Assembly: GCA_004431415.1 (NCBI GenBank)
Contig: QPMI01000432.1
Span: 394,134-458,133, forward strand
Direction of reading: 5' to 3'
DNA from: Cyanophora paradoxa CCMP329
Taxonomy: Eukaryota; Plantae; Glaucophyta
DNA length: 64,000 nucleotides
The first letter of the stretch is position 1. Every line of letters begins with the position of its first letter. Below, piece after piece: positions 32,910 to 54,103 of the stretch. The translations under genes were made by a program, and so were the position numbers. The notes under the pieces were generated by a model. The model was not told the origin of the DNA and ran no database searches. It saw nothing but the letters and a program-made list of their open reading frames with translations.

Positions 32910-35900
32910 CTACATAACCGTGCAAGCCTTGGAGCCCGAGGGCGCCGGTCGAGGAATCGAGGGAGCGGTGATCATGACGGGCACGGGGGCGCGCGGGGGT
33001 GCACGTGCACCCCGGGCCGCCTCGCTCGCTCTCCGCTCCCGGACCCGGGCCTCCAGCTGGGGGATGCGGGTCAGGCCGCCGGCGCGGGTCGAATGTCATG
33101 ATCACGGGGCGGGCGCGCCTGCTCATTCCGCCGCCTCCTCTCCGCGAGGTCGTGCTCCAGATCCAGCTGTTCGTCTTCGGAGGGGCTTCGGGCCGCCTCC
33201 GCAGGCGCGGCCACCGACGGGGGCGGGGGCGGCGCCGCGCCGGCCGCGAGGCCCGGGACCGAGGCAAAGAGCCGATCGAGGTTCTGCGGCTCAATTGACT
33301 CGCGGCAGGTCCCTTGTCGGACGGACCCCGGGTGGGGGGGTGGGGGGTGGGGGGGGGTGGGGGTGGGGGGGTGGGGGTGGGGGGGGGGGGGGGGGGGCCG
33401 GGGTCGCACGGCGAGAAGGGCCACGTTTCCGGCCGTGACGAAAGAGAAGGGTACGGACCCGCGGGGCAGGTCCTCGGGGGCCTGGGGGTACAGGGATCGT
33501 GGCGGAAGGGCGGAGGTGCGCAGGGACGGCGCACGGGGAACTCGGAGGGAAGGATGGGGAGGATGGGGCGCTTGTTGAGCTCGACGAGCTGCAGGGAGCA
33601 GCGTGGGGGGGCGGCGCGGGGGCGAGGCGAGAAGGGGGGTACGGGTACCTGGACGCGGTCCCGGAGGAGGGGGTCCCCGATGGAGTCGGGCGAGAGGAGG
33701 GGCAGGAAGGCGGCGCAGCGGACCTGCACGCGGGCCGGGGCTAGCGAAGGGCGCGCGAAGGAGCGGGAGGGGCCTCGTCCGCACCGCCGCGCGGGCGCCA
33801 AGGTCGGAGGGTCCGGGGCCGGCGGGGGCGTCTTGCATTTGGGAGTGGGCCCCCTGCGCCCGCTCAGCGGCGGTCGCCCGGGCGGTGCGGCGCGGAGGGG
33901 GGGATACCGAGCACTCGGTCCAGCAGCGCACGCGGCGCCGGGAGAGGGCGCGCACGACGCGCGCGGCGGCCGCCGCGTCCTGCGGCGGGTCGATGGGGCC
34001 GGGTGGAAGCAGAGGGCGGGCGCGGGCGCCGAGGCTCGGACCGCAGCGCAGCACCAGAGGAAGACGAAGGGCCCCTCCGCGTCGGAGTCCACGTCGCACC
34101 TGGGCGCGGCCTCGGCGGCTGCTCGCGGGGCCGGCGGGATTCGAACCGGGACTCGGGGAGGGCGGCCAGCTGCTCGGCGGCGGCGGAGGCGGCGGCGCCG
34201 CCGCCCGAGGCCGCAACTCCCACCTGCGGCGAGTTGGGAGGGGGCGGCGAGGGGCTGGGGCCAGCCGGCGCGGGCCTTCTGAGCCACTGTGAGGGCGAAG
34301 GCGGGGAGGCCAGAGGCGAGCAGCTCGGGGGTCGAGAAGTCAGCTGCACTCGGTAAGCTTGGCACGAATGTGAGGCGCGCGGCCGGAGGCCCGGGGGTAC
34401 ACGCACCGAACTGTTGCTTGAGGAGGAACCCCTGCGCATGCGCGGGCTCGCGTGAGGGCAGCTCGGGCCGCGCGGAGAGGCGCCAGCGCGCGCCTGAAGC
34501 TCGTCATCCAGCTCCGCGCGCTCGCGCCAGACAGGCAGCAAGACCCTGCGCATGCGCGCCCTAGGCCTCAGCACGGGCCGGCTTGAGGCGGCGGCGCCGG
34601 CGCACCTCCCGAGGGCGCGGGCGGCCGAGAGCTCCGATCGGCAGCGCTCCGACGAGCACGAGGCTCGTGACGCGACGAACACCACCGCGCCGACGCGCTT
34701 GAGGTGCTCGGATCCGGACGGCTGCCGCAGAGAAGCGCGTGAGCATGAGCAGGCCGCGGCGGGTTAGAGGAGGGGTACGTATACGTCTCACCGCAGCGTT
34801 CCCCGTCTCCCCCTCGGATCCCCTCATCAGGCACTGCCGGCGCTCCTCTGGGTACGGCCGGCCAAGAGGGAAGAGGAGGGGTACCGTGACGTGGGCGGCC
34901 TCGAGCCCGTCGCGGAGCTTCGCGGCGAACTCGGCCTCCCCCCCCGCATCCCCGTGGCTGGCCCCCTCTCAAGGACGGAACGGCTGCTCCGAAAGGACGG
35001 AAGGGCACCAGATGTAAGTGTCGCGGAAGCCCGAGGCGCGCTTGAGGGCGGCCCGAAAGGCCACGTCGCGGTGTGCCTGAAGGACAGTTCGGCGGGCGGT
35101 CCCCTCGCCAACCCATCGGCCCGCGTCCGCCCCTGCGGAAGCGGCTGCAGGCGGCAACGGATGAACACAGACAGCCAGTACACGGCGTACCCCTGGCGAT
35201 GAGGGCCGCGCAGGCGTCGAGCATCTCTGGGCCGAAGGCGACGGCGTGGTAGAGGGGGGTACGGCCCTCTGCGTCCGCCTCGCTGCGGGTGCGATTGCTG
35301 TGAGCTCGAGGCGGAGAGGGTCGGGTCGGGGCGGGGCGGAGGGGAGGGCACTCGATGGCGGAGGGCGGGGCCGAGGCGGCGAATCGCACGGCGGTCAGGC
35401 GGAGGCCGAGGCGGCACGCCTGCGCGAGCCGGCTCAGGGGCGGCTCCCGCCTACGAAACTCGACGCGACGGCGCCAGGGGAAAGGGATCATATGACTCGC
35501 CTCGCGCAGGGGGAACGCCTCATCGACGGGCCCGGGGTCGCCCTCGTCGTCGGCGCCAGCGTCCTTGCGACCTTGCACCCGTCTCTGCATGAGGAAGAGG
35601 GCCTCCGCCGCTTGGTAGAGTTCTGAGACGGGGCTCTGGAGGTTGCCCGTCGCATTCGCGGGCTGGAGCATGCTCGAGAACCGAACGTCGACGCCCTCGC
35701 TCAAGGCGAGGTCCAGGCACAGTCTGCAGAAGCAGGTGCACATGTCAGGAAGGGAAATTAAAGACTGCGCCCGCGAATTAGAAGCGGATCGCACCTGAAG
35801 TACTGCAGGAGGGCAGTCGACGTCGGGCTCTTCATGGCATCCATGTAAGCGAAGTTCACCGTCGTCTGGACCCTGCACCAGCCTCATGATCAGGAGCCCC

Positions 35901-38900
35901 CCAAGGCCCTCCTAAACCCTAGGGCCTGCAGCGCACGTTTTCTTCCTTTCTTCCCGCTTGTTTTCCTGGATGTCTTTTGGGACGGGGTCTAGCCCCCTTC
36001 GCGCGCTGGCGTCGAGCTCCCACTGCACCACCCACCTGCCGGCGCGTCAGCATGCGCAGAAGGGATTATGGCCCCAGTGGGGAAGGAAGAATTCGAAAGC
36101 GGGGACGGACCGCTGAAATTCGAGCGCGCTCACGGCATTCCCCTGCTTTTTTCTTAGAGCGGCTCCCTCCATCTGCAGTGCGTATGCTTACGGTGTCAGC
36201 GATGGAGGGCGTGGCGGGGTACAGGGAAGCACGTGATGTAGAATCAATCCGCCCTCAAGCACCGCATCGCCCGCAAGGTCTCGCAGCATCTGATGGGGGA
36301 TTTCGATAAATTTCCCAGCGATGCGAGAAAGTTTGATGACGAATATTTTAGAGCTCGAGCGTTCACGGGCCGCACCTGCAGTATGGGCTGCGGGCTGGGA
36401 TCACTGAAGCGGAAATCTTGGAGCATCCCGTTCGCCACTTCCGCCGCCTTGTTTTTGAGTTCGGACAGCTACGAGCACGTCAGATCTAGAGCCCGCGCGC
36501 TTGCGATAGCTAGACCCGCGGAGCCCTCGAGCTCCCCCGCACCGTCTCTGCAGATGCCCGCTCGAAAGCGGCCCGCACGACCGGCTCGCTGCGCGATCGC
36601 ACAGCAGCTTCCAGGGCCCCAGAGTCCACAGTCGCGCCTTTCTCGATGAGGAGCAGCGCCAGAGGGAGGCCCAAAGGCGATTCCAGGGCGGCCTGCAGCG
36701 CCGCGCGCGCCCTGCTCTCTCTGCCCCCGCGCCCGCGCGACGCCTCGCCATCTTGATCTCCCTTCCCTTCGTCGGGCAGCGCGCCCGCGTCCAGCAGAAT
36801 GCGGGCCATTTCTATCGCCCTGCGCCGGGGGCCGCGCTCGAAGTGGTCCCGGAGCCCATCGAAAGCGAAAACAGAGAGCGCGCACTCGCGATCGTGACCG
36901 TCCGCCACCGGTACCCCTTCGGGAGGTTTGCCCCCGGACCTGGCACGACCGCTCGCACCGAATCGCAGAAGGCTCCGGCGCGCAGAAACGAGCTGTCGCA
37001 CCGGCCGGCCCTCTCCTGCCCCCAGCCGCGTGGGAGGCACATTGCCGCCGCGAAAAGAGGCACGTCTTCAAGCCTAGGAGCCTTGGCGCCTTGGAGGGAA
37101 AAAGAGGGGCATGCGCCGAGCTCGAGGGCCATCCTGCAGCAAGGTGAATTTCGAAAGCCATCACACACGTGGAAGAGAGACGAAAGCACTTGAGAAACGG
37201 AATGTTGCGGCTAGAGACGGCCTTCGATATCGCGGCAGTTGTGTCGGCGTTCTTTGGCACGGCGTTCCCCGACTCCTTCAGCACTCTGCAAGAGTATGAA
37301 TACGCGGGACAGCCTTTTTAGCTTAAAAACGGGAGATCTAGAGGCTTTGAGGCACCGCAAAAAGGTGGTCCCCTCTTCGCCACTGGTAGCCGCACGCGAA
37401 AAACAACTCTCCGTCGGGTCACGGCTGCGTGCCTGCACCGGGGCGTTGGTGGCGTCAAAGGCGTCCGCGCCAGCCGCCAGCAGCAGCCTCGCGGCCGACT
37501 CGACAAAGGACGGCCCGTCCGCCGCGCCGGCGCTTGATCGCGAGCTCCTGGCCAGGGTCTGGTAGAGGCAGCTCTGCCTGTCGCTCCCCTTGGCGTTCAC
37601 AGCCTCCGCCAGCTTCGCCGAGGGGACTTTGTCCAGCAGAGCCCGCAGAAGGGGCAGGTCTCCGCGCAGGACGGCCGTGTGCAGAGCGGAGCGACCTACG
37701 ACTTGGTTGCGCGACTCCCACGCCACCGCGATTGGATTCGTGGGGTCGGCCCCCAGCGCGAGGAGCGCGCGGGCCGACGCCAGCGCTGTGGCAGCTGTGC
37801 TGGAGGCCGCCAGGCCCAATGCCGAGCTGTGCGAGAAACGGCCCGTGCCGGGCGGATCCGCTGGACGTCGACGCTCCGGCTGTGCTCCGCGACGCACCAG
37901 CAGACGGACGAGCGGCGCCGATCCAACAAGTGCAGCAAACTCGAGAGCAGAGGGTCCCGCCTTGGCTTGCATCTCTCGCTCCTCCCGTCCCCCGTTCTTG
38001 CCGCCTTGCATCCCGCCTTCCACCTTGACCGCCGTCTGCTTGTCCTCCGGACCTAGCTCAGGATCCGGAGAAGCACCCAGGGCGACAAGGTGGGAGGAGT
38101 TTGCATCGGTTGTATGCACAGCACAATCGGAGCACGCCTCGCGCGGATCTGCCCCAGCATCGAGCAGCAGGGCTGCGCATCCGTAGTCGCCGGCTGCGCA
38201 CGCTGCCACTAGCGGAGTTGTGGTAAACAGATGAGGGTTGCGACCAGGGCCAGGGCCGGGTTCCGAGATGCCGGCGACTCGGGCCGACGCGCGTGCACCC
38301 CGTTCTAGCAGAAGGCTGCTTGCGAGCTGAGTGTCGGTTTAAGGTAAGCTGCTCGTCGGAGCATCGCACCGGACGCAGTTGGCTGAGGCTGCGCGGGCCG
38401 CGAGGGCGAGGCAGATGTCCAAAAAGCCGGCGGGTGGTGCCGGGCACCAGTCGAGCAGCAACGTCTGCAAAAAGCTTCGTGAGAAAAGTGAAAAAAAGAG
38501 AGGGAAAGGAGGAGAGGGCGGGGAAGGGGGTCGACGGTTAAGGAATAGAATCCGAAATTTATGGGGAAGCAGGAACCAGGAGAATGGGGTCTCCCTGGGC
38601 GGCCGCGATCTCGAGCGGGCTGCCGAGCTCCCCGCGTCGGGCTTCGGGGGGGGAGGGGCAGCGCTCCAGGAGCAGCTTTGCGATGGCAGCACGCCCCTCC
38701 ATCACGGCGAGCTGCAGTGCCGAGCACTGCGCGAAGCGGCCCTGCAAAGAGAGAGATCGCAGCCGTCAGACCGGCCACGGGTTTCGCGCTCTAAAACAGG
38801 CAGCTTGCCCGCAAATCCGCGCCGTCGCAACCCTGGCGTTGCAGTTGGCGGGCAGTCCGCCAGCGGTCAGGTGCCGTTCTACGCATGTGTGCTGCTTATA

Positions 38901-39537
38901 ATTACCCGATCGAGAAGAAGAGAGACCACCTCCGCGCTGCCGGCTGCTGCCGCCGCCTCCAGCGCGCGCACTGCCACCTGCACAGGGATTCATTGCAATC
39001 GGAAGGGGAGGGGGCCATAAGCATGAACTGCAAGAGCGAGCCTCCTTCTCTCGTGCGCTTTTGAGCGGGACGTGGAGGAATCCTGGAATCGGTGCGCTCG
39101 CTTTGTCGGTGGTCGTGGGGTCCTTCTCGAAACGCTCGAAGTCGTCGTCCCAGAGCCTCGGCGCGGCCCGGCGGAGGTCGATCTTCGCCGCGCAGGGCGT
39201 GTCGAGCTTCGCGCCAGCGTCCAGAAGCTCCATCACGACCTCGACGTGGCCGCCCCCGGCGGCCGCATAGAGCGCAGTCCTGCAGTCGGATGCTGCGTCG
39301 ACCCTTGCGCCAGCCCTTAGCAGGAATCTGCGGGGCCACTGATCATGAGACATGTAAATGCGAAACGTCCGCCGTGCGATCAACTGACTGCACGGAGGCC
39401 GTGTCACCCCTCTCAGCGGCGTGCAAGAGCGGGGGTGATCCATTCCAGGGCCAAGTGGCGGCGTTGCGGGCGGCGGGTACGCCCCTCTCCTCGAGAAACC
39501 TGAGCGGGGTGTCGGCTGGCGGATTCACGGTGGTGCA

Positions 39538-39604
<67 letters not shown>

Positions 39605-40608
39605 CCCCGGCCCCCGGCCCCCCTGATCGTACCTCACGGCGCGCTCGTGGGAAAGCAGCACGGCGCAACGGCTCAGCAATGTGCCACCGGCTCTGAGGCC
39701 GCTACTGACGACGGCGAGCGAGGCGACGTCTGCGCCCCGCTCCGCCAGCGCCAGGAAAGCGTCGACGTGCCCTGCCTCTGCAGCCTCCGATAGGGCGCTC
39801 CGCATCCGCTCGAGCTCCTCGTCCTCCGGATCCCGGCCAAGGGCCGTGCACGTGCCTCCGATGGCGCAGGCGCGGGCGCGGGACACAGGGCTCCGATGTC
39901 TGCACCCAGATCGAGGAGGGCGCGGATGACTTCCACGTGCCCCGCTCGGGCGGCGGCATGCAGGGCGACGCCTCTAGCTCCGGGTCCGGCGCGTCGACGT
40001 CGCCATCCCCCCGGTAGCCGTGCAAAGGGGCGCCCAGCTCGGCAAGCGCTCGCACAGCCCCGCATGGCCGCACGCCGCCGCCAGGCGGATCAGCGACGTC
40101 AACTTGAGGTTCTTGCGGCCCGCGGTGCTCTCGAGCTCCTCCTGAAGGGGCGCAGCGCTAACCGGAGCGCTCACGTCGAGTCCCGCTGCCGCGAGGGCCC
40201 TGCGATCATAATTATATAAGCGAGCAGATGTTAGAAATACGTACGGTCATCAATCGACAGGCGGCAGCCGAGGACAGCGTGGCAGATCGCGCACCTCAGA
40301 ACATCTACGGCGCCCGCCTCAGCTGCGGCGTGTCCAGCGGCGGAGAGCAGTTTTCGATATCGATCAGGAGGCGTGCTTGGGTCTGAATTCGCGAGAAGAT
40401 CCCTGTGCGAGTGATTGGCGCCAGCGCGGCGGGCCGCTAATCAAAAGCTCAAGCAGCGGTACCTCATCCGAGACACGTCGCCTGCGGCTGCGGATCGGAC
40501 GAAGCTGAGTCGCGCGTCCTCCTGTGCTGCAGCTGGCGACACCTTCGAGTCCGCCTCGTAGTCGGAAGGAACGTAGTCCGGGCTTTCCTCGGACTGCATC
40601 GATATCAT
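32910..40608 (-). CDS. Ankyrin-repeat - TIR - degenerate TIR - CaaX protein (paralog A)
   Basis: ANK repeats (TALYAAAGGGHVEVVMELLDAGA, GRSALHTAVLRGDLPLLRALL, EGRTPLYHAV). TIR ~35020-34320: TYICHGDAGGEAEFAAKLRDGLEAAHVT...AVVFVASRASCSSERCRSELSAARALGRVLLPVWRERAELDDELQGFLLKQQFADF. Last exon ends GSKACTVM* (TAG 32912-32910). Start approximate. Confidence 0.82.
39540..39602. repeat. Poly-C tract (~63 nt) within paralog A, probably intronic
   Basis: Uninterrupted C run; exact length may be an assembly artefact. Confidence 0.85.
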
Positions 40609-41470
40609 AGTATCGCTGGACTGGCGCCGCGGCCGGCGTCCAGATCAGAGGAACCGGTGTTATGCGATGCTGGCGTCGCCTAGCTATATAGCGGCCTATA
40701 TAGCTAGGCCTGCCGACTGCGCATGCATATCACCGCAGCATCATGGCATATGCCGCGCTAGGCAGCTGAGGCAACCTCAGCCTGCCTAGGCCTCATTGTT
40801 TTTCTGCCGCAGTGCCTTGCTGAAATTAAATTGGTGTCGACGTCTTGGAAACGATCTTATATATATACTATATGATAACTGTTTTATTGTGCACTGTAAT
40901 TATAAGAATATAAGCAGTTGATCTTATCACCCCACCCCCTCAAGCCCCACTCCTAGCCTGGAGCCGACCCCCCAGCCAGTGTCACCGACCGGCTGGCCGT
41001 CCGATAAAGCCGAAAAGGCTGGCCCGGCTGGTCAACAAATCGGGCGGCTGGGCCATGGCCAGCCTAAAAGTCCAAAACCAGCCAGCCAGCTGTTCGGCCG
41101 GGCCGCTGGCCAGTGCCCTAGTCGGCGCCGGCCCGGCGCCGGGCCGCCGGGCCGGGCCGGGCCGCCCGGCCGGTGGTCCGGCGGTGGATCGATATCGCCG
41201 AGTCGGATCGATATCGGAGCCTCGGAGGTCCGACGGACTCCGGGAGGTCCCCGGGAGGATCATCGTCGATTCATCGATATCCGATATGATCGCCCATTGA
41301 TCGGGAGGATGATGCCGGCACCGGGCAGCCGGCGTCCGGACGGTCATGCCGCCATATGCATACTGTAGAACTAGTTAAATTAGTACAGGAAAATAATTAG
41401 TACTTTGCCAAAACTGCTTGTATGGGCGGTAATATTGGGGGTATACTGTATGGAACGACCTCTCAGCACG

Positions 41471-41586
41471 TAATTACCGCGGTACCAAATTACCGCGTTT
41501 AACAAATTCTCGGCGCGGTAATTTGGTACCGCGGTAATTAAGTGAGCGCGGTATTATAGTGCCACACCAGCGTACCGTACTACGGT
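41471..41586. mobile_element. Diverged, inverted partial copy of the 42112-42366 MITE family with a perfect 27-bp hairpin
   Basis: TAATTACCGCGGTACCAAATTACCGCG (41471-41497) and its exact reverse complement (41514-41540). Aligns by eye to the reverse complement of 42112-42220. Confidence 0.7.
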
Positions 41587-41589
41587 ACT

Positions 41590-42043
41590 TAGGGTTCCGG
41601 GCCGAAATTTCGGCCAGCCGAAATTTCCGAAAGATTCCGAATTTTGGCCATGGGGGTTGGGGACCTTCTGGCCAGTTCAGGGGGCCCTGAGGGGGAAGGA
41701 CTCCGGAGGAGCACGTGAGTGAGGCCCTAAGGGGCCCGGGCGCCGGGCGGCGGGCGCCGGGCGGCGGCGGCCGCGGCGCCGGCGGCCCGGCGGGCCGGCA
41801 CCAACTTGGGGTGCGCGCGCGGGGGCGGGGAGTCGGGGACTGGCTAACTTCGTCCGTAGGCACTGCTAGACACACTAGTAGGCCGTCTGTCTTGGATTAA
41901 AGGGGACTGTGCATGTTATTAAGACTAGTACTTCCGGAGGGCAGGGACATACCGAAATTTCGGCCGAATTTCGGCGAATTTCGGCGGGCCGATTTCGAAA
42001 TTCGGCGCTCTAAAATCCGAATTTCCAAAATTCGGCAACCCTA
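41590..42043. mobile_element. Putative non-autonomous hAT-like element
   Basis: Ends TAGGGTTCCG ... CGGCAACCCTA, with clustered subterminal CCGAA(A)TTTCGG motifs at both ends. No 8-bp TSD seen. Confidence 0.55.
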
Positions 42044-42111
42044 AAGTCTACGGTACGGTCGCGTACGGTCAGCGTCGGTCACCGGGTAGGCCGGGGTAGC
42101 TATAGCTACTA

Positions 42112-42366
42112 CCGTAGACGACTTATATACCGCGCTGACTTAACTACTGCGCTACCAAATTACCGCGCTCAAAATTGTTATAACGCGGTAATTTAAAAAA
42201 ATTGGTAGCGCGGTAATTGTCTTTTGCTTAGATTTGCTAACACTTTTTGTATGACCGTACCCCAAATTGATGAAAACGCGCTAATTTGGTGCCGCGCTAA
42301 AGCGCCTACCGGCGCCGAAATTTTAGAACGCGGTAATATGTGGCGCGGTATTTAAGTCGTCTACGG
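42112..42366. mobile_element. 255-bp MITE, Tc1/mariner (Tc2/pogo-like) type
   Basis: 24-bp TIRs CCGTAGACGACTTA(T/A)ATACCGCGC with one mismatch, flanked by TA at 42110-42111 and 42367-42368. Internal ATTACCGCG/CGCGGTAAT repeats. Confidence 0.85.
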
Positions 42367-42718
42367 TAGCTAGGCGTGCCACGGTGCACGTATACGGTAT
42401 ACCGTTTATCCACTTTATAATTACCGTACGCGTACGCGTACCGGTAGTACCGTTACTACCGTAGTACGTAGTACGTACGTGTTCAGAAGCTTGAGCCTTG
42501 AGCAATTGCGCGAAGGAGGCCTAGGGCCGCGGTTCGCGCATGCGGATCATGATCATCGGATTTCGATCGCCGGCGCGGCCGCGGGCCTTCGCGGCCGCCG
42601 GGTCGGTCTCGCCGCGGCCGTCTAGATCTTTAAATTTGCACTTCAAGGCTTGAACGTCAATTTAGCGCTAGCTATAGAACGGCTTCGACCAGCAGCGCGC
42701 TAGCGCGCTCTTAGATCG

Positions 42719-45700
42719 ATGGGCAACGTGATCGGCGATCCAATGGCGGGGCGGCAGAAGAAGCCCAGGGGCCCCGTCCCCGCCGCCGGTCGTTCTGGCG
42801 GCCGTCGCTGGCGATGAGGACGAAGTCAGGTACGCGACTGGACTCCGGGAGCTCGTATCTGCTCTGCACCACGGCCACGTGCACATCGAGAGCGTTAACG
42901 TTAAAACAGGCGGCTGCTGGCGGTGGCGTGCGCAGAGGCGGAACCATTGATCCCGAGGCGGCTGCGAAGGCTGCCGCGGATGAGGCGCGGTACGTACATA
43001 CGCTCTATGGATTCGTTGCTCTAGATCTGCCAGGCTGCACCAGACCAACGTTAGCCAATCGTGGTGCAGGAAGCAGATGGACGGCGCTGGCCCTGACACA
43101 ACAATTCCCATGATGGATTTGGCCGCTCGCATGGCCGCTACTCAAGCACGGTGCGCGCCGCGCGTCTTGAGATCCTGCTCAGCGGCCGCTCCACGCGCTG
43201 GCGATCCGCGCGCGCGCACCCTATAGCTAGCGCTCCAGCTTGGCGGCCGACGATGACAGCGCAGGGAGACGGCCGAGACCGCAAGGGCAGCCATCTTCGG
43301 AGATATATTGGCAGCCTCCGCGCGCTTCTGCAGCCTCTCGCTGGTCAAGTGTGCACGTGCTATCAGAGGAAGCTTAAGAATTTGCTTAGAGCTCGAGGCG
43401 GATCCGGAGCTGAGCGCCGCGAATTCGAATGCGCAGGCACGTCCTGGAGACCATTCCAGAGCTGCGGAAGCCAGTGCAGGCGCCGGATGCACACACGGAG
43501 CTGCATTGGGGGTATGGTAGCCTTGAATGGGGCGCAAAATCCCTGCTGGCTGCGGCGTGCGCGGCGGCCGAGGGCGGGCGGACGGACGTCCTGAAGCACC
43601 TCCTGTCGCTTCCCGACGCTCGGTCGACGTCCAGGCAGCCTTTCGATCATCCCGACGTCCTTACCCACGCTATCCACGGCGGCTCGATGCCCGTCGTCCG
43701 GTTCGTCCACCGACGCGCTGTGCCGCGCGCGTCATGATCATTTATCCAGCGCGCCAAATTAAATCCCCCGCACGTGCACAGCTTTCTGCTGGAGGAACGT
43801 AACGTGAATGCTGCACGCTGGGCGCCCGTGCCAGCGTTCCTCGCTCGCAGGTGCGCCGTGAGCGAAGACGCGAAGAAGCTCAAGATATTCTCGTCCGCCA
43901 ACTGCTTCGTGGACTCCGTCGAACTCCCGTGCGCCGCGCAGCGGCCGCCACGCACATCCCGTCGTTTCACGCACCCCCGGCCCGCAGCGTGCCCATCTGG
44001 CATCTTTTGAAAGAAGACATCGCCAGTTTACACGAGCGCAATTATCCCCTCGACACGGCAGCATGGCGCGGCCACATCGAAATCCTCCGGTCCGCACTTG
44101 CGCCTCGCTCGGGCCCACTAGTACTAGTACTGGGCCAACCATTGAATTCTCATGATCAGCCGTCGACGCGTGAATTTTCTGTATCGCAGGATGCTTTTAG
44201 ACGCTGGGGAATGGGACGCGAAAGCGAACGCAAAGAGAGCATATTCCGCCAAGACTTACGGCATCAAATATGCCTTCTGCGCTGCAGCGATTCACGGTCG
44301 AGTCGACGCATGCAGGCATGCATTCGATATCATGGTTTTTCGGAACCTGATTATGATACCTTTCAATTGCAAGATCAGTGATATTGACGTGCTGTGGCGC
44401 AGGCTCCTGGTTTCGGTGGCCGGTGGTCTACCCGAATTCGAATTCCAATTGCAATCTCATCATGACAAGCTTATCCGGATCTGCGCGGCACTGGGACAGC
44501 TGGGCTCTCTTCGGTGCGCGTGCGCATGCGGCCACCCATTACCGATTGAGCGATTGTTCGTCTTGTGATCGGATGTGCTCGAACTTCGGAAGGTACCTGG
44601 TGGACGAGTTGCAATTGGCGGCCGCTGCTGGCAGCGACGAGCTTCATCTAGCAATGCTTTGGGCTGTGCGCGCAGGGCACGCGGACTGCCTGCGATTCTT
44701 CGTGGAACACGGAGCGCCTCTGAGCTCCTCCAAGGCGAGCAGGCTGGCAAGATATCGATCTCCCCGCACATGTGCATCGTCGATTCCTTCTCTCAGAATA
44801 AGAACAGAGCCGACCACAACTGGACGGTGTCAACCAATCCGGATCCCATGTACGGAGAGCCGAGGGACTTGATGCAGGCGGCGGGGTCAGCCGCCAGTCC
44901 CGAGTGCCTGCGGCTGGTCTGTCCAGCGCGAATTTCGAAGGCCGTGCGCCTCCGCCGGCACGAGAGCCCACTCTCCCTCTTCTACCTCAGATCGCCGAGC
45001 TGGATGCAGCCGCCTTCGAAAACGGGCGGGACGAGGCGCTGCTGCGGGCGGCCGCCGCGAAGCCCCCCCTGCGGGGCCCCGACCGGCGAGCGGAGGCCGT
45101 GCGGTTGCTCCTCGATCTCGGGGCCGGGATCGGCGACCCCGCCCTCTTCGACCCGTCCCGGCCCGTGCGGCACCGGTGCCTCCACACCCCCTCCACGCCG
45201 CATGCGCCCAGGCCCGCACCCCCATCCGCATTCCTGTCATCGATGTCGTTCTTCTGACGTCCGGGCAGCTGGAGCCTAACCTCGACGTGATCCGGTGGGC
45301 TCCTCGCGATCGCCACCCCGACCTGCGCATGCTGCAGCCGCAGCTGCCGCTCGCCGCTGACTTCGGAGTGTCGAGCAGGCTGCTCATTGAGGCGAAGAGC
45401 GACCTCTCCGCTCTGGACAAGGGGGGACGCACGCCCCTTCATGCCGCCGCCGCCCTGAATTCCGTGGCGCTCGTCCGGTCAGTTCGCGATCGGCCTGCAG
45501 CTGCTTGCGCAACCGAAAGTCCCAATTGCAACCGATGCTTCTTGCCATGGCGCGGTCGCAGCGCGCTGCTGGACGCCGGGGCGGACCCGACGGATCCGGA
45601 GCTCGAGCCGGGCGAAAGGCACCGCTGCATCTCGCGTGCGAGGCGCTGGCAGTGGACACGGCCCTCCTGCTCCTCGAGCGCGGCGCCGACCCGCATCGCG

Positions 45701-48700
45701 CGGCCGCGGGCGGCGCGCGGCCGCTCCACTGCTGCGCCTGGCCGAGGCACAACTCCTCCGATCCAGTTCGCGAGGCCGAAGAGGCGCGAAACAACCTCGA
45801 GGTCGAGGAGGTGCGGGCGAGGATCCTCGCCATCGCCGACGCGCTTCTCGCGGCGGGCGCCGAGATCGACGCCGCCGACGACGATGGGGCCACCTTCTTC
45901 ACCATTGCGGCGGCGTCCGCGGACGGGCGCGACGCCGCCTTCCTCGGCGCCCTTCTGGAGCGCGGCGCGGACGTGAACGCCGCCTCGAAGAAGGCTCTGC
46001 CCCCCCCCCCCCCCCCCCCCCCGCCCCCGGCCCCTGCACGCCGAGCTGAGGCGAGGCCGCAGGGGACCGCGCTGGCCGCCGTGGCCGGGGGCCCAGTTGA
46101 GGACGCCCTCCCCCTCGTCCGCTTCCTCCTCTCGAAAGGGGCCGACCCGAACGCCGGCCGGCGCCTCGCCCGCCCCATCGCGTCCGCCGCTCTGGCCGCC
46201 GGAGGCAGGACGGATGTCCTAAAGGTTCAAGTTTTCATTTCTGCCGCGGTCGTGATCATGAATTCGCTGCCGACGCGCGCCCTCCTCACAGGTGCTTCTG
46301 GACGCGGGCGCCACGCTCGACGCCGAGCACGTGGTGGAACAAGAAAGGGGCGCCGGCCCCCCGCGGCCGCTGCCCGTCGCGGCCCTCACGAAAGGCGCCA
46401 CCCGGATGTGAGCGCATCGAATTCGCCGCCGGCCACGCCGGCGCCCACGTCGATGTTCCGCCGCGCAGGTTCCTGCTCCAGCGCGAGTTCGATCGGCTCT
46501 CCGCGCCAGGCGCACCGCGCCCGCCCGTCGAGCGCGCCAGAACGGTCTACCTCCTCAGCGGGAAGCGCGTGCGCCCATGCCATCCCCCAGTAGCGGTCGG
46601 GCTCGTGATCGGCCGCGCCGCTCATGATCACCCCGCCACGCAAGGACGACGGGGCGCTCTCCGGCGCCGCCGCCAGGTGCGGCCTCCGCTCTGAGGAGAT
46701 CTATAGCTAGAAGCCCTTGGATTTCCCTGACCCTCGAGCCCTCCAGGTTCCTCCTCACAGCTTTCATCGCCACTCTCGAGGGCACGGAACCAGAGGCCGC
46801 CCGGCGCGTCCCGCGCGCGCCCGCGCCCGCGCCCAGAGGAGCTCGATGCGACCCGTGCGCGCGCCGCAGGCTCGCCATCGATCTCCTCCTCGCCTGCGAC
46901 GGCCGGCTGCGCGTCCGGGACTTCCTCGTCACAGACCCGAAGGTCGATCCCGGCGCCAGCCCCGCCCGCCTGCAGCTGCCCGCCCGCCCCCGGGCCCTCG
47001 GCCCTCTGACGTGCTTCTCGCGATCGGCAGTTTGCGGAGCGCTTCGCGAGCGAAGCGGGGGCGGCGGAGGAGGGGATGCGCGTGTGGCGCGGCGCGGTGC
47101 GCCTCGCGGCCCTCGAGGGCCGCCTCGACCTCGACGGCCGCGGGCCCGGCGAGCTCGCGATCGAGGAGGGCCCCCTCGAGCTCCCCGAACCCGATCTCTC
47201 CGCCGCCCTCCGCGAGGTCCGGATCCCGCACGACCTCGCACCCGAGCGCCGGCTCGCCCCGCGACGACCCCGACCCCGACCCCGACCCCGACGCCGACGC
47301 GGCGCAGGCGTGCCTCCTCGGGCTGCGCCTGACGGCCCTCCGCCTCGCCCGCGCCGCCCCCAGCGTCCAGTCAGCCCGCCGGCGCCGGCCCCCCCCCCGC
47401 CGCCCCTCGAGCTCCCCATCTAACGCGCCCCGCCCCGGCCCGTGCAGCACACCCGCGGCCGACGCCCTAGGGCGCGCGCCGCTGTACCACGCGGCGGCCC
47501 GGGGGCCCGCCATGCTGGACGTCTGCGGGGCGCTCCTGGACCGAGGTACCCCCCCCCGAGCCCGGCCGAGCCCGGAATCCACTCTCAATCTGCGCCGGCT
47601 TTAATTTCGAGCTCGCTGCGCCCGCGCAGGCGCCGAGCTGACGCCGGCGGTGCTGAACGCGACGCGGGACGGCGAGTTCCGGCGGGCCCTCAAGGAGCGC
47701 GCCGCCCTCCGCCAGGTCTTCATCAGGTCTGCTGCACCCGCCCTAGGCCTCGCCCTCGATCGCGAGAGCTCGCGCTCGCGCTCGGGTCCCGCCGACGCCT
47801 CGCAGCTACGGGCACCACCCCGTCGACGTCGCGCGCTTCGCCCTCCGCCTCCGCGACCGACTCCAATCCGACGGCGTAATGGCGCGGCCCCGCCGCCCCT
47901 CGAGCTCCGATCCCACCCCTCTCTGCTGCGGCTGAACGTTCTGCGCAGTGCTGGGTGCGGTTCGACTGGCCGGGAGGAGGCGCTCCGCCCCGCTAAAAAG
48001 CAGCGCAGATGGACGAGATGAAGGCTACGGGCATCGAGGCCGGCACCGAGGTCTCCCCCGCCCCCTCCCTCTCGGTGCGGGTCTGACTCGGTGATCATGA
48101 CGCCCGCGGCAGTGGCGGGAGGAGATCGGCCGCGGGCTCCGAATGGCCAAAGCCGTCGTCTTCGTCGCCTCCCCGGTGCCTTCGATTTCGGCGCCAGATC
48201 TTTCTCCTCGGCGCTTTCTCCGTCTCACCGAGCCGCCCGCCCGCAGCACTCCTGCGCCTCGGACTGGTGGCGCGTGGACCCCGCACCCCGCGAAAAACCC
48301 CGACCTTGAGCTTATGATCACGGCGACCGCAGCATGCTGGAGCTGAGCCGGGCGCTGGACCTCGGGAAAGCCGTTGTCCCCGCCTGGCGCCTCCGCACTG
48401 AGCTGGACCCCCGCGCCGCGGTCCGGCCCCCTTCTTCCACTTCCTCCGAGCCGGCTCGGCGAGCCGACGTATACGTATCCCCCCGGCAGGGGCTCCTCCG
48501 TGGCCTCGCCATCGCGGACTTCACGACGCGCGCACCCCGTACCCCCTCTCCTTCATCGGCTCTTTGACGCCACGGCGCCCGCGGCCGCAGCGACGAGCTC
48601 TTCGAGTCCGGGTACAGCTCCTTCCTGGCTGGCCTGAAAGCCGCCCTCGCGGCCGTCCCCTCCGAAGGCGCCCCGCGTCCCCCACCGCGGTGTGATCGGT

Positions 48701-49927
48701 GCCGCGCTGATCATGAGCGCTTGCCGGCAGACGGCGGGGGGGAGGGGGCGGAGGGGGCCCTAGGCCTGCTCGCCCACCCGAACGCGCGCTGCGACCCCGC
48801 CGCCGGCCCCTTCTGCTTCGTCTGGAGCAGCCCCGAGGTCCGCCCCGCCCGCCCGGGCCGCCCCCGCCCCCGCCCCGCGCCGCCCCGCCGCCGAGCCCGG
48901 CCGGCCTGCAGGACGCGCCCCACGCGGCGGCCGCCGTCGGCGCGGCGGCGCTGCGCGGCGTCCGCTGCTTCGTCGACTGCTCCGTGCCGCCCTCGCTCTT
49001 TTTCTCGTTCTCGCCGCACCCTCGCGCGCGGCCTCTGATCGAGAGTACGTCTCGCAGGACGGCCCGCCGGAGGAGGGGGCCTCCCGCGCCCTCGCCGCCT
49101 GCGCCGCCTTCGTGCCCCTCCTAGGAGCCTCGAGCTCCTCCTCCCCCGCCCTGGCCTCCCGCCTCAAGGTGCCCGGCGGCCCGCCCCGCCCTTTGATTTC
49201 TCTCGTAGAGTCGAGAGTCGAGCCGGCGCCCGCGGCCGCAGGCGGCCGCCGCCCACTCCGTACCCGTCCGCCCGCTCGTCCTCTCCGGCACGCGGGCGCG
49301 TTCCCTTCCTCTCGCGTTGGATCTATGTATCTCCCGTTGCGATCCGAGCCAAACCCGCTGCCAGGTGCCTTTCGCGCTGGAGTACACCCTCGCGAGGACG
49401 CGGGGCTTCCCCCTCGTACCCCGCGGCGGCGCCGCGGACGACGTCGACGTCGACCCTGCCGTCCGCCCCTGCAGGCCCCCCGATCGCGAGCCCTCCGAAC
49501 CTGACCGCACTCAGGTTCTCGACGCTCTGCTGGCGGATATCGATGCGAGGGGCCCGCGGCCGGACGCCGCGCCGGCGGCTGCGCCCGTCTGGCACGATCA
49601 CTCCGCCGTGCCGGGGGCGCCCTCCTCTCGCGATCGCGATCGCGAGGCACTCAGGGCCGCGATCGCGAAGCTCGACGCCGAGCACGCGCGGGTACGAATA
49701 TTAATCCCGAGATTGGGCCCTCCCTCCCTTTCACCTGCTGATCATGACTTCCTCTGGCGCAGTTGGAGGCGGAGCTGGTGGAGCTCGACCGTGCCGGCGC
49801 CACGCGGGCTAGCGCTATAGCTACCAGCGCTCCCGCGGCCCCTGCACGGGATGTGCAGCCCTTGGGTGCAGCGGCGGACCCCAGGCAGCCGGCAGCCCGT
49901 TCTTCGAGAGCTTGTAGCATGATGTAG
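42719..49927 (+). CDS. Ankyrin-repeat - TIR - degenerate TIR - CaaX protein (paralog B)
   Basis: ANK repeats (YPLDTAAWRGHIEILR, WAVRAGHADCLRFFVEHGA, GRTPLHAAAALNS, LGRAPLYHAA). TIR 47716-48523: VFISYGHHPVDVARFALRLRDRLQSDG(VM)CWMDEMKATGIEAGTEWREEIGRGLRMAKAVVFVASPHSCASDWCMLELSRALDLGKAVVPAWRLRTELD...IADF. Ends SSRACSMM*. Start codon uncertain (probable indel). Confidence 0.85.
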
Positions 49928-52771: not shown

Positions 52772-54103
52772 ATGCAAGCATTCGCTGCGGCCGCGGCACT
52801 CGCATACGCGCGCACGCCAGCCAGACTGACGCCGCGACCAGCCGCATCCGTCCGGCGCGCCGCCCGCTCTCCTTCGTCCGCCGTCCACACCGGCGCCCTC
52901 TCCCGCCCGTCGGCGAGCTTCTTCGGACAGCAGCCGCGATACGCATTCGCATCGCGCGGACGTCAGCTACCTCAGCGCACCGTTACCATGGCGTCCGGCA
53001 GCGGAGCGCCGATCAAGTACCTCTCGCAGACGGAGGCCCAGAAGATCGATGAGGAGCTCATGGGCCCTCTTGGTTTCTCTGTCGATCAGCTGATGGAGCT
53101 CGTGCGTTCCGCCCCCGGCGCTGTTCGCATACGCGTCGCTTACAAGCGCCGCCGCTCGCACGTCGGGATGTTGGCGCAGGCCGGCCAAGCGTGCGCCCTC
53201 TCGGTCGCGCGCGCCTACCCTTTGGAGAAGCACCCTCGCGTGCTCGTGATATGCGGGTTCGTCGGGCGACTCGCCGGGCTGTCGCGGGCGCCGACGACGC
53301 GTGCCTGCGGCAGGCCTGGTAACAACGGTGGGACGGCCTGGTGGCCGCGCGGCACCTGGCGCACTTCGGATACAAGCCGTGCGATTCTCGCTTCTCTGTC
53401 TGCGTTCCGCTCCGCGCGGCCGACGCCGACGGCAGGGCGATCGTGTACCCGAAACGGACGGCGAAGCCGCTGTACGCGAACCTCGTCGTCACGTGCGAGT
53501 CGCTGGGCATACCCGTCCTCGACGCCCTCCCCGCTGACTTCGAGGCCGCATTTGACGTGCGCCCGCGCCCGCCCCGGCCCGCGACCGTAGGCTAGGCCCC
53601 CTCACGACCAGCCGCCCCTGGGTACAGGTCGTGGTGGACGCGATCTTCGGATTCAGCTTCATGAGCGGGGGCGTGCGGCCGCCCTTCGACGCCATCCTCG
53701 CCGCCCTCGCCCGCACCAAGCTCCCCGTCGCCTCCATCGACGTACCCTCCGTCCGCCCCCTGCCCCGCCCCCTCCGTTCCCCCTCCCCCCTCTCATGTTT
53801 CGCCCCTCCTGACTGTCCGCGGGACATGCAGGGATGGGACCTCGAGAAGGGTGTGTACCCCCCGCGCAGCTAGAGCCAGCCCCTGCTAAGGTTAAACTCA
53901 CCGACGCGGGCGTGCAGGACCGACGGGCCCGGACGCGATCCGGCCGGACGTGCTGATCAGCCTGACGGCCCCGAAGGCCTGCTCCCGCCACTTCGCGGGG
54001 CGCCTCCACTTCCTCGGGGCCGCTTCGTGCCCCCCGCCATCGCCCAGAAGTACCAGCTCGCGCTGCCCCGTACCCAGGCCTCGACTACATCCTCCAGCTC
54101 TAG
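52772..54103 (+). CDS. NAXE: NAD(P)HX epimerase (YjeF_N), stand-alone, with transit peptide
   Basis: [29 protein letters not shown]|[38 protein letters not shown]|[11 protein letters not shown]. Single-base indels present. Confidence 0.93.

What the first reader, a model, noticed from the sequence alone, without database searches (positions are those of the whole stretch)
32910..49927. Head-to-head pair of ankyrin-TIR-pseudoTIR-CaaX genes: candidate membrane-anchored TIR signalling/immune system
Seen: two divergently transcribed ~7-kb paralogs with collinear C-terminal blocks (AC[R/L]LGLRLTA; DAxGRxPLYHA...GPxMLDxCxALxxRG; FRxALK; TIR; GPFxFxW...CAAFxPLL; coiled coil; CaaX). Their TIR domains are split over 6-8 tiny exons and are barely visible in the ORF track. 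Paralog B is a textbook TIR_2-like domain (VFISY...CWMD...GIEAGTEWREEI...AVVFVASPHSCASDWCMLEL, Glu codon 48340-48342); A keeps C-R-S-E-L (Glu 34634-34632). No NB-ARC or NACHT motif was seen. Known: TIRs with this Glu are NAD+ hydrolases in SARM1, plant TNLs and bacterial Thoeris; ankyrin arrays act as ligand sensors; plant paired receptors such as RPS4/RRS1 are head-to-head. Inference: a repeat-sensor/TIR-enzyme pair acting at a membrane in an early-branching archaeplastid. I do not recognise this architecture as described.
Basis: partly seen in the sequence, partly recalled or inferred. Interest (0 to 1): 0.92.

Follow-up and report, generated by a model that had tools for sequence, protein, structure and literature searches.

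The report
Paired ankyrin-TIR-TIR-CaaX genes, Cyanophora
Two neighbouring, oppositely oriented genes of the alga Cyanophora paradoxa each encode a long ankyrin-repeat array, two TIR domains, a coiled coil and a lipid-anchor signal. One gene has a fully equipped NAD-cleaving-type TIR and the other a degraded one, which resembles plant paired immune receptors built from other parts, but no function has been tested.

Summary
Gene A (minus strand, 32910-40608) and gene B (plus strand, 42719 or 43429 to 49927) are divergent paralogs in Cyanophora paradoxa contig tig00020610. Both encode an ankyrin array, a conserved LGLRLTA helix, TIR1, a degenerate TIR2, a coiled coil and a CaaX box (CTVM in A, CSMM in B).

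A's TIR1 passes Pfam TIR_2 and its model matches the SARM1 TIR fold (Z 15.4). TIR2 is a diverged TIR with Arg at the catalytic Glu position. B's TIR1 is spread over nine small exons, including a 6-nt micro-exon and three GC donors. It keeps the catalytic Glu, the alpha-C Trp and the BB-loop Gly. A keeps the Glu but has lost the Trp and the BB-loop motif.

The family has about 19 public gene models, all from Cyanophora, in an A-type and a B-type clade. A/B neighbours recur on at least three other contigs. No NB-ARC is present.

Public models of both window genes are truncated. No RNA contig covers B itself, although transcripts of paralogs confirm two of its exon edges. NADase activity, prenylation, A-B cooperation and an immune role are all inferred.

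This scan had already reported the same family at several other loci of this genome.

The parts
32910..40608 (-). Gene A (A-type): ANK array, linker, TIR1, TIR2, coiled coil, CaaX
   Evidence: The public model P0133 (tig00020610_g12086.t1, 676 aa) maps from 36172 to 32913. A-type paralog models P0123 and P0012 map collinearly from about 40200 to about 33400. The N-terminal exon MISMQSEESPDY at 40608 is homologous to the N-termini of P0012 and P0123.
36540..40440 (-). A: ankyrin-repeat array (many exons)
   Evidence: Pfam Ank, Ank_2 and Ank_4 score above cut-off in ORF pieces 37211-38209, 38766-39443 and 39673-40065. The region is collinear with the ANK regions of P0123 and P0012.
35441..36539 (-). 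A: linker that joins the ANK part to the TIR part. Exons include 36377-36468 (LSELKNK...DPSPQPILQ) and the exon beginning at 36172 (MEGAALRK...), which follows a CTGCAG acceptor.
   Evidence: Phase-0 GT-AG junctions are visible. The linker is homologous to the continuous linker of the single-gene paralog model P0123 (DPSPLPVLQ, HWLLAWEVEA, FLRMALDLALNEG).
35183..35440 (-). A: conserved QACRLGLRLTA helix, an in-frame intron, and the last ankyrin repeat (GRTPLYHAVAFGPEMLDACAALIARG)
   Evidence: This is the best A-versus-B match: 54% identity over 84 aa, E 2.6e-12. See also the alignment A1.
34285..35031 (-). A: TIR1
   Evidence: Pfam TIR_2 scores 45.9 bits against a cut-off of 28, E 9.5e-12, on P0133 residues 284-399. 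The AF2 model residues 33-185 match the SARM1 TIR at Z 15.4, rmsd 1.9 A over 115 residues.
34632..34634 (-). A: Glu codon at the catalytic position of TIR1 (ERCRSEL). The alpha-C Trp position is Arg.
   Evidence: The family's E column aligns with AbTir E208 and its W/R column with AbTir W204.
33248..34160 (-). A: TIR2 (degenerate TIR, with Arg at the Glu position in LLRDRV)
   Evidence: Pfam TIR_2 is sub-threshold (23 bits, E 1.2e-4) but covers profile positions 1-107 of 122. hhalign of TIR1 against TIR2 gives probability 96.6%, E 6e-10. The AF2 model of TIR2 alone (pTM 0.76) has TIR domains as its top seven hits among 48,161 chains, Z 10.3-11.9.
33009..33181 (-). A: coiled-coil helix (SEDEQLDLEHDLAERRRRNEQ | LEARVRERRASEAARG)
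   Evidence: One long helix in the AF2 model, residues 374-409, pLDDT about 95.
32910..32924 (-). A: CaaX box CTVM plus stop
   Evidence: It is conserved in paralogs (CALM, CSLM, CTVA, CSIS, CSVS).
40609..42718 (.). Intergenic region between the two 5' ends. It holds two clusters of the palindromic motif TACCGCG[GC]TA (41467-41554 and 42109-42370) that form 68-nt inverted arms.
   Evidence: Fourteen of the 16 matches in the 64-kb window lie within 40751-42350, against 5.6 expected for the whole window.
42719..49927 (+). Gene B (B-type): ANK array, TIR1, TIR2, coiled coil, CaaX
   Evidence: The public model P0006 (tig00020610_g12088.t1, 850 aa) maps from 43429 to 47932 at about 100% identity and stops inside TIR1. 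The upstream exon at 42719 matches the sister-contig model P0004.
43540..47545 (+). B: ankyrin-repeat array, LGLRLTA exon (47308-47369) and last ankyrin exon (47448-47545)
   Evidence: Pfam Ank families are found on the ORF pieces and on P0006.
47630..48691 (+). B: TIR1 in nine exons. These are 47630-47726, 47806-47881, 47949-47954, 48009-48050, 48113-48175, 48247-48269, 48333-48420, 48490-48527 and 48591-48691.
   Evidence: Four exon pieces give collinear hits to a TIR1 profile that does not contain B, with i-E from 1.6e-3 to 2.9e-8. Each of the eight exons compared (the 6-nt one was too short) is 70-95% identical to P0014, whose TIR_2 hit has E 3.5e-24. Spliced RNA contigs of a paralog end or continue exactly at 48009 and 48050.
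47949..47954 (+). B: 6-nt micro-exon TGCTGG (Cys-Trp of the CWMDE motif)
   Evidence: It is flanked by AG and GT. Paralog RNA contigs read ...TCCTGCTGG|ATGGAC.... All B-type proteins have CW at this position.
48340..48342 (+). B: catalytic-position Glu codon (SDWCMLEL), with the alpha-C Trp kept
   Evidence: and the alignment to AbTir DWTNYEL.
48731..49430 (+). B: TIR2 (exons 48731-48837, 48912-48983, 48058-49168 read as 49058-49168, and the first part of 49242-49691). Arg sits at the Glu position (SPALASRLK).
   Evidence: Exon pieces give collinear hits to the TIR2 profile, with i-E down to 6e-10.
49644..49798 (+). B: coiled-coil segment across the last intron (EALRAAIAKLDAEHAR | LEAELVELDRAG)
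   Evidence: It is homologous to the helix modelled in A.
49913..49927 (+). B: CaaX box CSMM plus stop

Best explanation
Shown: this is one A-type/B-type gene pair of a family found only in Cyanophora paradoxa. Each protein has a long ankyrin array, a conserved linker, TIR1, a diverged TIR2 with Arg at the catalytic Glu position, a coiled coil, a disordered tail and a CaaX box ending in Met.

Shown: B's TIR1 has every sequence hallmark of enzyme-type TIRs. These are FISY, CWMDE, the BB-loop GIEAGTEW and SDWCMLEL with both Trp and Glu. A's TIR1 has the TIR fold and the Glu but lacks the Trp and the BB-loop motif.

Inferred mechanism: both proteins are farnesylated and sit on a membrane. The ankyrin arrays hold the TIRs apart or bind a ligand. 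On a trigger, the coiled coils and TIR-TIR contacts cluster the TIRs head to tail, so that B's TIR1 cleaves NAD+, probably into a cyclic ADPR-type signal. The degenerate TIRs (A's TIR1 and both TIR2s) serve as non-catalytic assembly or regulatory surfaces. The A and B types work together, with A as sensor or regulator and B as executor, under a shared divergent promoter. This is analogous to head-to-head plant pairs such as RPS4/RRS1, but without an NB-ARC.
For: Architecture: Pfam ANK in both genes. TIR_2 above cut-off in A's own model P0133. TIR fold for A's TIR1 at Z 15.4 to SARM1. TIR2 homologous to TIR1 and best matched by TIR structures in an unbiased search. Long C-terminal helix. CaaX in both genes and in most complete paralogs of both clades.

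B: a stop-free 16-exon chain, 69% identical to P0014, with collinear exon hits to profiles that exclude B.

Enzyme hallmarks: the family's W and E columns align with AbTir W204 and E208, and its BB-loop Gly with G174. In AbTir, E208A is inactive, W204A loses activity and cyclisation, an intact BB loop is required, and the active site forms between two TIRs across the BE interface (bioRxiv 10.1101/2022.05.07.491051). Only the B-type TIR1 hits bacterial defence TIR models such as SPARTA-type, SAVED-TIR and ThsB.

Pairing: the A and B clades are separated with 100/100 support. A-type and B-type models are neighbours on tig00021178 (g19209/g19210), tig00001098 (g7051/g7053), tig00020611 (g12096/g12098) and here (g12086/g12088). 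The window's A is close to P0008 (which shares long identical stretches with P0012) and to P0123, and the window's B is closest to P0014. P0012 and P0014 are themselves neighbours, which fits duplication of the pair as a unit.
Against: - No enzyme, lipid, localisation or interaction data exist.
- No RNA contig of four runs covers B's own exons, and expression of A was not examined.
- B's candidate first exon is frameshifted in this assembly.
- B's TIR1 has everything needed to act alone, so a partner is not required by sequence.
- Several family members have no known partner in the models I retrieved.
- Orientation at the other loci was not checked, because their DNA could not be fetched.
- A keeps its Glu, so it may still hydrolyse NAD+.
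- The ANK-TIR continuity of A rests on splice-site reading and paralog models, not on RNA.
Confidence: 0.4

Rival explanations
1. The two genes are independent paralogs. Each protein works on its own, as homo-oligomers through its coiled coil and tandem TIRs. The head-to-head layout is left over from an old inverted duplication that was later copied by segmental duplication, with no functional coupling.
For: B's TIR1 is complete in itself. Each protein already carries two TIRs and a coiled coil, so a head-to-tail TIR pair can form within or between copies of one protein. More B-type (about 12) than A-type (about 7) models were found, and several have no identified neighbour of the other type.
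Against: The two types are old (about 38% identity in the TIR-to-C-terminus part), yet they are still adjacent at four loci by gene numbering. The relationships in the two clades look congruent.
Confidence: 0.3
2. The TIR domains act as non-enzymatic scaffolds or adaptors at a membrane, as in animal TLR adaptors. The ankyrin arrays act as protein-binding platforms, and NAD+ is not cleaved.
For: Three of the four TIR domains in the pair lack one or more catalytic hallmarks. MyD88, MAL and TRR-2 TIRs are among the good structural matches.
Against: B-type TIR1 conserves Glu, Trp and the BB-loop Gly across all B-type members. This is unexpected for a pure scaffold. Its nearest sequence relatives are bacterial TIR_2 domains of the enzyme type, including AbTir and the TIRs of STAND NTPases.
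Confidence: 0.12
3. This particular copy is silent or decaying. The family is real, but B (and perhaps A) at this locus is a pseudogene or an unexpressed spare.
For: No contig from four RNA-type runs lies on B's unique ankyrin exons, while paralog transcripts are present. The MGNVIGD exon has a frameshift relative to P0004. There is an in-frame 72-nt insert in TIR2 relative to P0014.
Against: About 1.6 kb of B's C-terminal half in 16 exons, and the parts of A covered by P0133, have no stops, and their splice sites and motifs are conserved. The frameshift lies in C/G homopolymer runs of a long-read assembly and may be an error. Contigs cannot show absence of expression.
Confidence: 0.12

Closest known systems
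Bacterial TIR_2 NADases (AbTir, PdTIR; TIR domains of nSTAND1/WD40 or TPR NTPases)
   Same: These are the best sequence relatives of B-type TIR1: AbTir at E 4e-5 with the family profile, and Geodermatophilus TIR-nSTAND1 proteins at about 35% identity. The Glu, Trp and BB-loop Gly columns are shared.
   Different: They have no ankyrin array, no second TIR and no CaaX. They are bacterial, whereas these are intron-rich eukaryotic genes.
SARM1 / TIR-1 (ARM repeats, SAM, TIR NADase)
   Same: The logic is similar: a helical-repeat regulatory array, an oligomerisation module and a C-terminal TIR. SARM1 is the best structural match of A's TIR1 (Z 15.4) and TIR-1 that of TIR2 (Z 11.9).
   Different: These proteins have ankyrin rather than ARM repeats, a coiled coil rather than SAM domains, tandem TIRs, and a C-terminal CaaX. 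No sequence-level orthology was seen.
Plant head-to-head paired TIR-NLRs (RPS4/RRS1)
   Same: Both are divergently oriented paralog pairs in which one TIR looks competent and the other degraded. The RPS4/RRS1 TIR heterodimer is among the structural matches.
   Different: There is no NB-ARC, no LRR and no integrated decoy domain. Here the sensor would be the ankyrin array, and the pairing is inferred only from synteny.
Ankyrin repeat-TIR proteins of oomycetes (mentioned as uncharacterised in PMC9153377)
   Same: Ankyrin repeats are fused to a TIR in a microbial eukaryote.
   Different: No sequences were compared here. A tandem TIR, coiled coil, CaaX box or paired genes are not reported there.
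CaaX-prenylated proteins (Ras/Rho type)
   Same: Both have a C-terminal Cys-a-a-X with X = M, S or A, which by established knowledge makes a farnesyltransferase-type substrate. The box follows a flexible tail and is conserved in both clades.
   Different: No TIR protein with a CaaX anchor is known to me. Prenylation was not tested.

Membership tests
TIR domain (Pfam TIR_2, PF13676) | Profile match above the gathering score | tested here: met
   A TIR1 scores 45.9 bits against 28. B cannot be scanned whole because its spliced product has no reference, and its single exons give no Pfam hit. B's exons do match a family TIR1 profile collinearly and are 70-95% identical to P0014, whose TIR_2 hit has E 3.5e-24.
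TIR domain (Pfam TIR_2, PF13676) | Flavodoxin-like TIR fold | tested here: met
   A TIR1: Z 15.4, rmsd 1.9 A over 115 residues, to SARM1 TIR. A TIR2 folded alone: the top seven of 48,161 chains are TIRs, Z 10.3-11.9, with a modest margin over deoxyribosyltransferases at about 10. B was not folded.
Enzyme-type (NADase) TIR | Catalytic Glu in alpha-C | tested here: met
   TIR1 of B (48340-48342) and of A (34634-32) both have GAG, aligned to AbTir E208. TIR2 of both has Arg there.
Enzyme-type (NADase) TIR | Aromatic residue four positions before the Glu (AbTir W204) and an intact BB-loop Gly (AbTir G174) | tested here: met
   This is met in B only (SDWCMLEL, GIEAGTEW). It is not met in A (SERCRSEL, GSEGETGNAA).
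Enzyme-type (NADase) TIR | Glu-dependent NAD+ cleavage | not testable with these tools
   This needs a biochemical assay.
Paired plant NLR (RPS4/RRS1 type) | NB-ARC and LRR domains | tested here: not met
   Pfam finds only Ank families and TIR_2 on P0133, P0006 and the full-length paralogs P0123, P0033 and P0014.
Paired plant NLR (RPS4/RRS1 type) | Head-to-head genes whose products work as a hetero-complex | tested here: inconclusive
   The head-to-head layout is shown here. Adjacency of an A-type and a B-type model recurs on three other contigs by gene numbering. Complex formation was not tested.
SARM1 family | ARM and tandem SAM domains N-terminal of the TIR | tested here: not met
   There are no ARM or SAM hits. 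The proteins have ankyrin repeats and a C-terminal coiled coil instead.
CaaX-prenylated proteins | C-terminal Cys-aliphatic-aliphatic-X directly before the stop | tested here: met
   CTVM in A and CSMM in B. Paralogs of both clades have CALM, CSLM, CTVA, CSIS and CSVS. Lipid attachment itself is not testable here.
Thoeris ThsB | ThsB-type TIR together with a ThsA effector | tested here: not met
   There are only weak ThsB model hits for B-type TIR1 (E 1.4e-5). No SIR2/SLOG-type neighbour was seen among the flanking ORFs I checked. The flanks were only partly surveyed.

The most novel reading that the evidence does not exclude
A-type and B-type proteins form an obligate, farnesyl-anchored hetero-complex. 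In it, a TIR-degraded sensor (A) controls a catalytic TIR executor (B). That would be a paired immune-receptor system without an NLR module, which arose independently in glaucophytes and signals through NAD+-derived nucleotides from a membrane.
Probability: 0.22. Interest if true: 0.85.

Novelty: new variant of a known kind. Interest (0 to 1): 0.62.

Why it matters
TIR domains are the shared enzymatic core of bacterial, plant and animal immunity. How they were wired before or without NLR modules in early-branching algae is poorly known.

A family restricted (as far as seen) to this glaucophyte couples a large ankyrin sensor-like array to tandem TIRs and a lipid anchor. It is kept as live-type/degraded-type neighbour pairs. 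That makes it a natural test case for three questions: whether paired sensor/executor logic arose more than once, whether degenerate TIRs serve as assembly partners for catalytic ones, and whether TIR signalling can be organised on membranes by prenylation.

There is also a practical point. Both public gene models at this locus are truncated because of micro-exons and GC donors, so domain surveys based on that gene set will undercount these proteins.

Tried and rejected
- HMMER search of 1.84 billion representatives with the LGLRLTA and last-ANK block. The list was dominated by generic ankyrin proteins. It was useful only because a few Cyanophora models surfaced.
- Exon-by-exon Pfam scan of five B exons and one A exon gave no hits, because the exons are too short.
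- The joined spliced product of B, and of A's ankyrin half, was not sent to any search or folding tool, because it has no reference. B was judged exon by exon and through its closest paralog P0014.
- RNA evidence: contigs of four runs gave no piece on B's unique exons, only cross-matching paralog transcripts. This is not proof of silence.
- The look-up of encoding contigs for P0014 found nothing on record, so the other loci's DNA, orientation and intergenic motifs could not be checked.
- Foldseek with the whole two-TIR model ranked SIS-domain sugar isomerases first (TM about 0.2, rmsd about 18 A). I rejected these as spurious two-domain matches. Single-domain alignment gave TIRs.
- Complex prediction was not run. 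B has no reference, a TIR-TIR pass would not separate specific pairing from generic TIR self-association, and I do not claim that binding is shown.
- Literature searches for Cyanophora or glaucophyte TIR, and for ANK-TIR, found nothing relevant.
- No Rfam family is present in the window.
- Bacterial-type promoter and terminator scans of the intergenic region were at chance level and do not apply to a eukaryote.
- The earlier scan reading that each partner keeps only half of the enzyme surfaces does not fit this locus as written, because B's TIR1 keeps all the hallmarks I could score.

Full report
**Organism and locus.** The window has about 70% G+C and holds short-intron eukaryotic genes. Proteins recovered with window exons carry EukProt names of Cyanophora paradoxa (EP00741, gene models tig..._g....t1). 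Two of them map at about 100% identity on the window:
- P0006 = tig00020610_g12088.t1 (850 aa) maps to 43429-47932 on the plus strand.
- P0133 = tig00020610_g12086.t1 (676 aa) maps to 36172-32913 on the minus strand.

A sister contig, tig00020611, carries near-identical models (P0004 and P0021).

**Check of the observation.** The two Glu codons are GAG at the stated coordinates, and both genes end in CaaX plus stop: A in CTVM and B in CSMM. Ankyrin families pass Pfam cut-offs in ORF pieces of both genes.

After composition correction, only the LGLRLTA and last-ankyrin block is significant between A and B at the ORF level (54% over 84 aa, E 2.6e-12). The other exons are too small for that test, and the ankyrin arrays have diverged.

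**Gene B.** The public model stops inside TIR1. By reading the three frames and checking phases in a script, I obtained 16 exons from 47308 to 49927. They total 1599 nt with no internal stop. All acceptors are AG (nearly all GCAG), 12 donors are GT and 3 are GC (GCGCG...). Introns are 39-84 nt. The exon parts are 69% identical to the B-type paralog P0014 overall, and 70-95% identical across the TIR1 exons that could be compared.

TIR1 is spread over nine exons. One is a 6-nt exon, TGCTGG, that encodes the Cys-Trp of CWMDE.

RNA-type contigs of two runs do not cover B itself. They do contain spliced transcripts of a close paralog that read ...TCCTGCTGG|ATGGAC... and ...ACCGAG|TGGCGGGAGCAG..., so they break or continue exactly at my exon edges 48009 and 48050.

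Profiles built from family TIR1 and TIR2 alignments that do not include B hit B's exon pieces in collinear order, and hit nothing else on the plus strand of the window.

The joined product of B has no reference, so it was not searched or folded as a whole. Single exons give no Pfam hit.

**Gene A.** P0133 carries Pfam TIR_2 above threshold at residues 284-399, and a second, sub-threshold TIR_2 match at about 452-562. The model retains an in-frame 51-nt GT...AG stretch (VPLLFPLGRPYPEERRQ) that no other A-type member has.

P0133 starts at a Met that directly follows a CTGCAG acceptor. Upstream, phase-0 GT-AG junctions link the last ankyrin exon (...SAETV, 36540) to an exon LSELKNK...DPSPQPILQ (36468-36377) and then to MEGAALRK (36172). 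This linker is homologous to the uninterrupted linker of the single-gene paralog model P0123. P0123 and P0012 map collinearly over the whole stretch from about 40200 to about 33400.

So A is most likely one gene, from 40608 to 32910, with the ANK and TIR parts together. This is inferred, not shown by RNA.

**Domains.**
- An AlphaFold model of P0133:236-676, built with 13 family sequences (mean pLDDT 72.8), has two well-modelled alpha/beta domains and a long C-terminal helix.
- TIR1 aligns to SARM1 TIR at Z 15.4 (rmsd 1.9 A over 115 residues). It also aligns to the Hydra TRR-2 TIR, SPARTA TIR-APAZ, SNC1, RUN1, RPS4 and AbTir.
- TIR2 folded alone (pTM 0.76) was compared with 48,161 chains without Foldseek. 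The seven best are all TIR domains: TIR-1 at 11.9, TRR-2 and SARM1 at 11.1, RPS4/RRS1 and ThsB at 10.9, then IL-1RAcPb (10.8) and MyD88 (10.3).
- Profile-profile comparison of TIR1 with TIR2 gives 96.6% probability. It places Arg of TIR2 (LLRDRV in A, ALASRLK in B) at the catalytic Glu column.
- The family TIR1 profile finds AbTir, PdTIR and RPV1 in the PDB by sequence. The family's W and E columns lie on AbTir W204 and E208, and the BB-loop Gly lies on G174.

In AbTir, E208A is dead, W204A loses activity and cyclisation, an intact BB loop is needed, and the active site forms between two TIRs across the BE interface (bioRxiv 10.1101/2022.05.07.491051).

B-type TIR1 keeps all three features. 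A-type TIR1 keeps Glu here (Gln in P0033 and P0135) but has Arg for the Trp and no BB-loop motif. Only B-type TIR1 hits bacterial defence TIR models.

**Family.** Searches returned about 19 models, all from Cyanophora. A tree of the TIR1-to-C-terminus part separates an A-type clade (5 rows) from a B-type clade (8 rows) with 100/100 support.

A-type and B-type models are neighbours by gene number on tig00021178 (g19209/10), tig00001098 (g7051/53), tig00020611 (g12096/98) and here (g12086/88). The window's A groups with P0123 and P0008, which shares long identical stretches with P0012. The window's B is closest to P0014. P0012 and P0014 are neighbours of each other, so the pair may have been duplicated as a unit. 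That is only three or four pairs, and orientation elsewhere is unchecked.

CaaX boxes with X = M, A or S are kept in both clades, while the tail before them is not conserved.

Outside Cyanophora, the nearest TIR1 relatives found were bacterial TIR_2-nSTAND1 NTPases, at about 35% identity.

**Mechanism.** What is shown is the architecture and the pattern of residues. What is inferred is the following sequence:
- farnesyl anchoring at a membrane;
- control or ligand sensing by the ankyrin array;
- clustering through the coiled coil and TIR-TIR contacts;
- NAD+ cleavage by B's TIR1;
- the degenerate TIRs acting as assembly or regulatory surfaces;
- A and B acting together.

The main rival is that the two act independently. 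Others are a scaffold-only role, or that this copy is silent.

**Known or new.** I found no paper on TIR proteins of Cyanophora or glaucophytes. A review notes uncharacterised ankyrin-TIR proteins in oomycetes (PMC9153377).

The genes are in the public gene set, but here both are truncated. This scan had already reported the same family, including head-to-head pairs, at several other loci of this genome. My results agree with those notes on architecture, family and the Arg in TIR2. They differ in that, at this locus, both TIR1 domains keep the Glu and B's TIR1 is complete.

I class it as a new variant of a known kind: a repeat-plus-TIR signalling protein with tandem TIRs, a CaaX box and type-A/type-B pairing.

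Noticed in passing
window 40751-42350 (clusters at 41467-41554 and 42109-42370): The region between the two 5' ends holds about ten copies of the palindromic motif TACCGCG[GC]TA, often as AATTACCGCGGTA. They are partly arranged as 68-nt inverted arms 572 nt apart. Fourteen of the 16 window matches lie here. This could be a shared regulatory array or a small inverted-repeat element.
   Followed up: partly
window 47882, 48270, 48528; gene A near 34494 and 33122: GC-AG introns with the donor GCGCG recur. There are three in B's TIR1, each needed to keep family-conserved residues (GVM|CW, DWC|MLEL, DFT|T). There are two in A, and the public model P0133 uses them.
   Followed up: partly
window 48092, 48315, 48708, 49739; 30 sites in the whole window: The palindrome TGATCA, often as CTGATCATGA, is about sevenfold over a rough expectation. 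In B's C-terminal half it lies only in introns, 15-25 nt before the GCAG acceptor. It looks like a branch-site motif.
   Followed up: partly
window 42719-42826: B's candidate first exon begins MGNVIGDPMAGRQKKP, which has a Gly-2 as in N-myristoylation signals. It loses frame in a C/G homopolymer run compared with the sister contig's model P0004. A-type paralogs P0033 and P0135 start MGGSQS and MGASFGS, so some members may carry lipid signals at both ends.
   Followed up: partly
window 34836-34886 and 47882-47932: The public gene models are flawed at this locus. g12086 keeps a 51-nt in-frame intron inside TIR1 and starts at an internal Met. g12088 reads into the intron after 47881 and ends there, so it lacks most of TIR1, TIR2, the coiled coil and the CaaX box.
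   Followed up: yes
window 49290-49361: There is an in-frame, stop-free 72-nt insert in B's TIR2 (TRARSLPLALDLCISRCDPSQTRC) relative to P0014, at a place where P0134 also has an insert. I found no canonical splice sites that would remove it in frame.
   Followed up: partly
window 53556-53870 (+), with 53323-53592: A neighbouring gene fragment matches YjeF_N (NAD(P)HX epimerase type; Pfam E 7.7e-7). It is probably an unrelated housekeeping gene.
   Followed up: partly
window 33330-33420 and 39530-39600: Long C-rich or G-rich runs lie within gene A's span and read as poly-Pro or poly-Gly in some frames. They seem to lie in introns.
   Followed up: no
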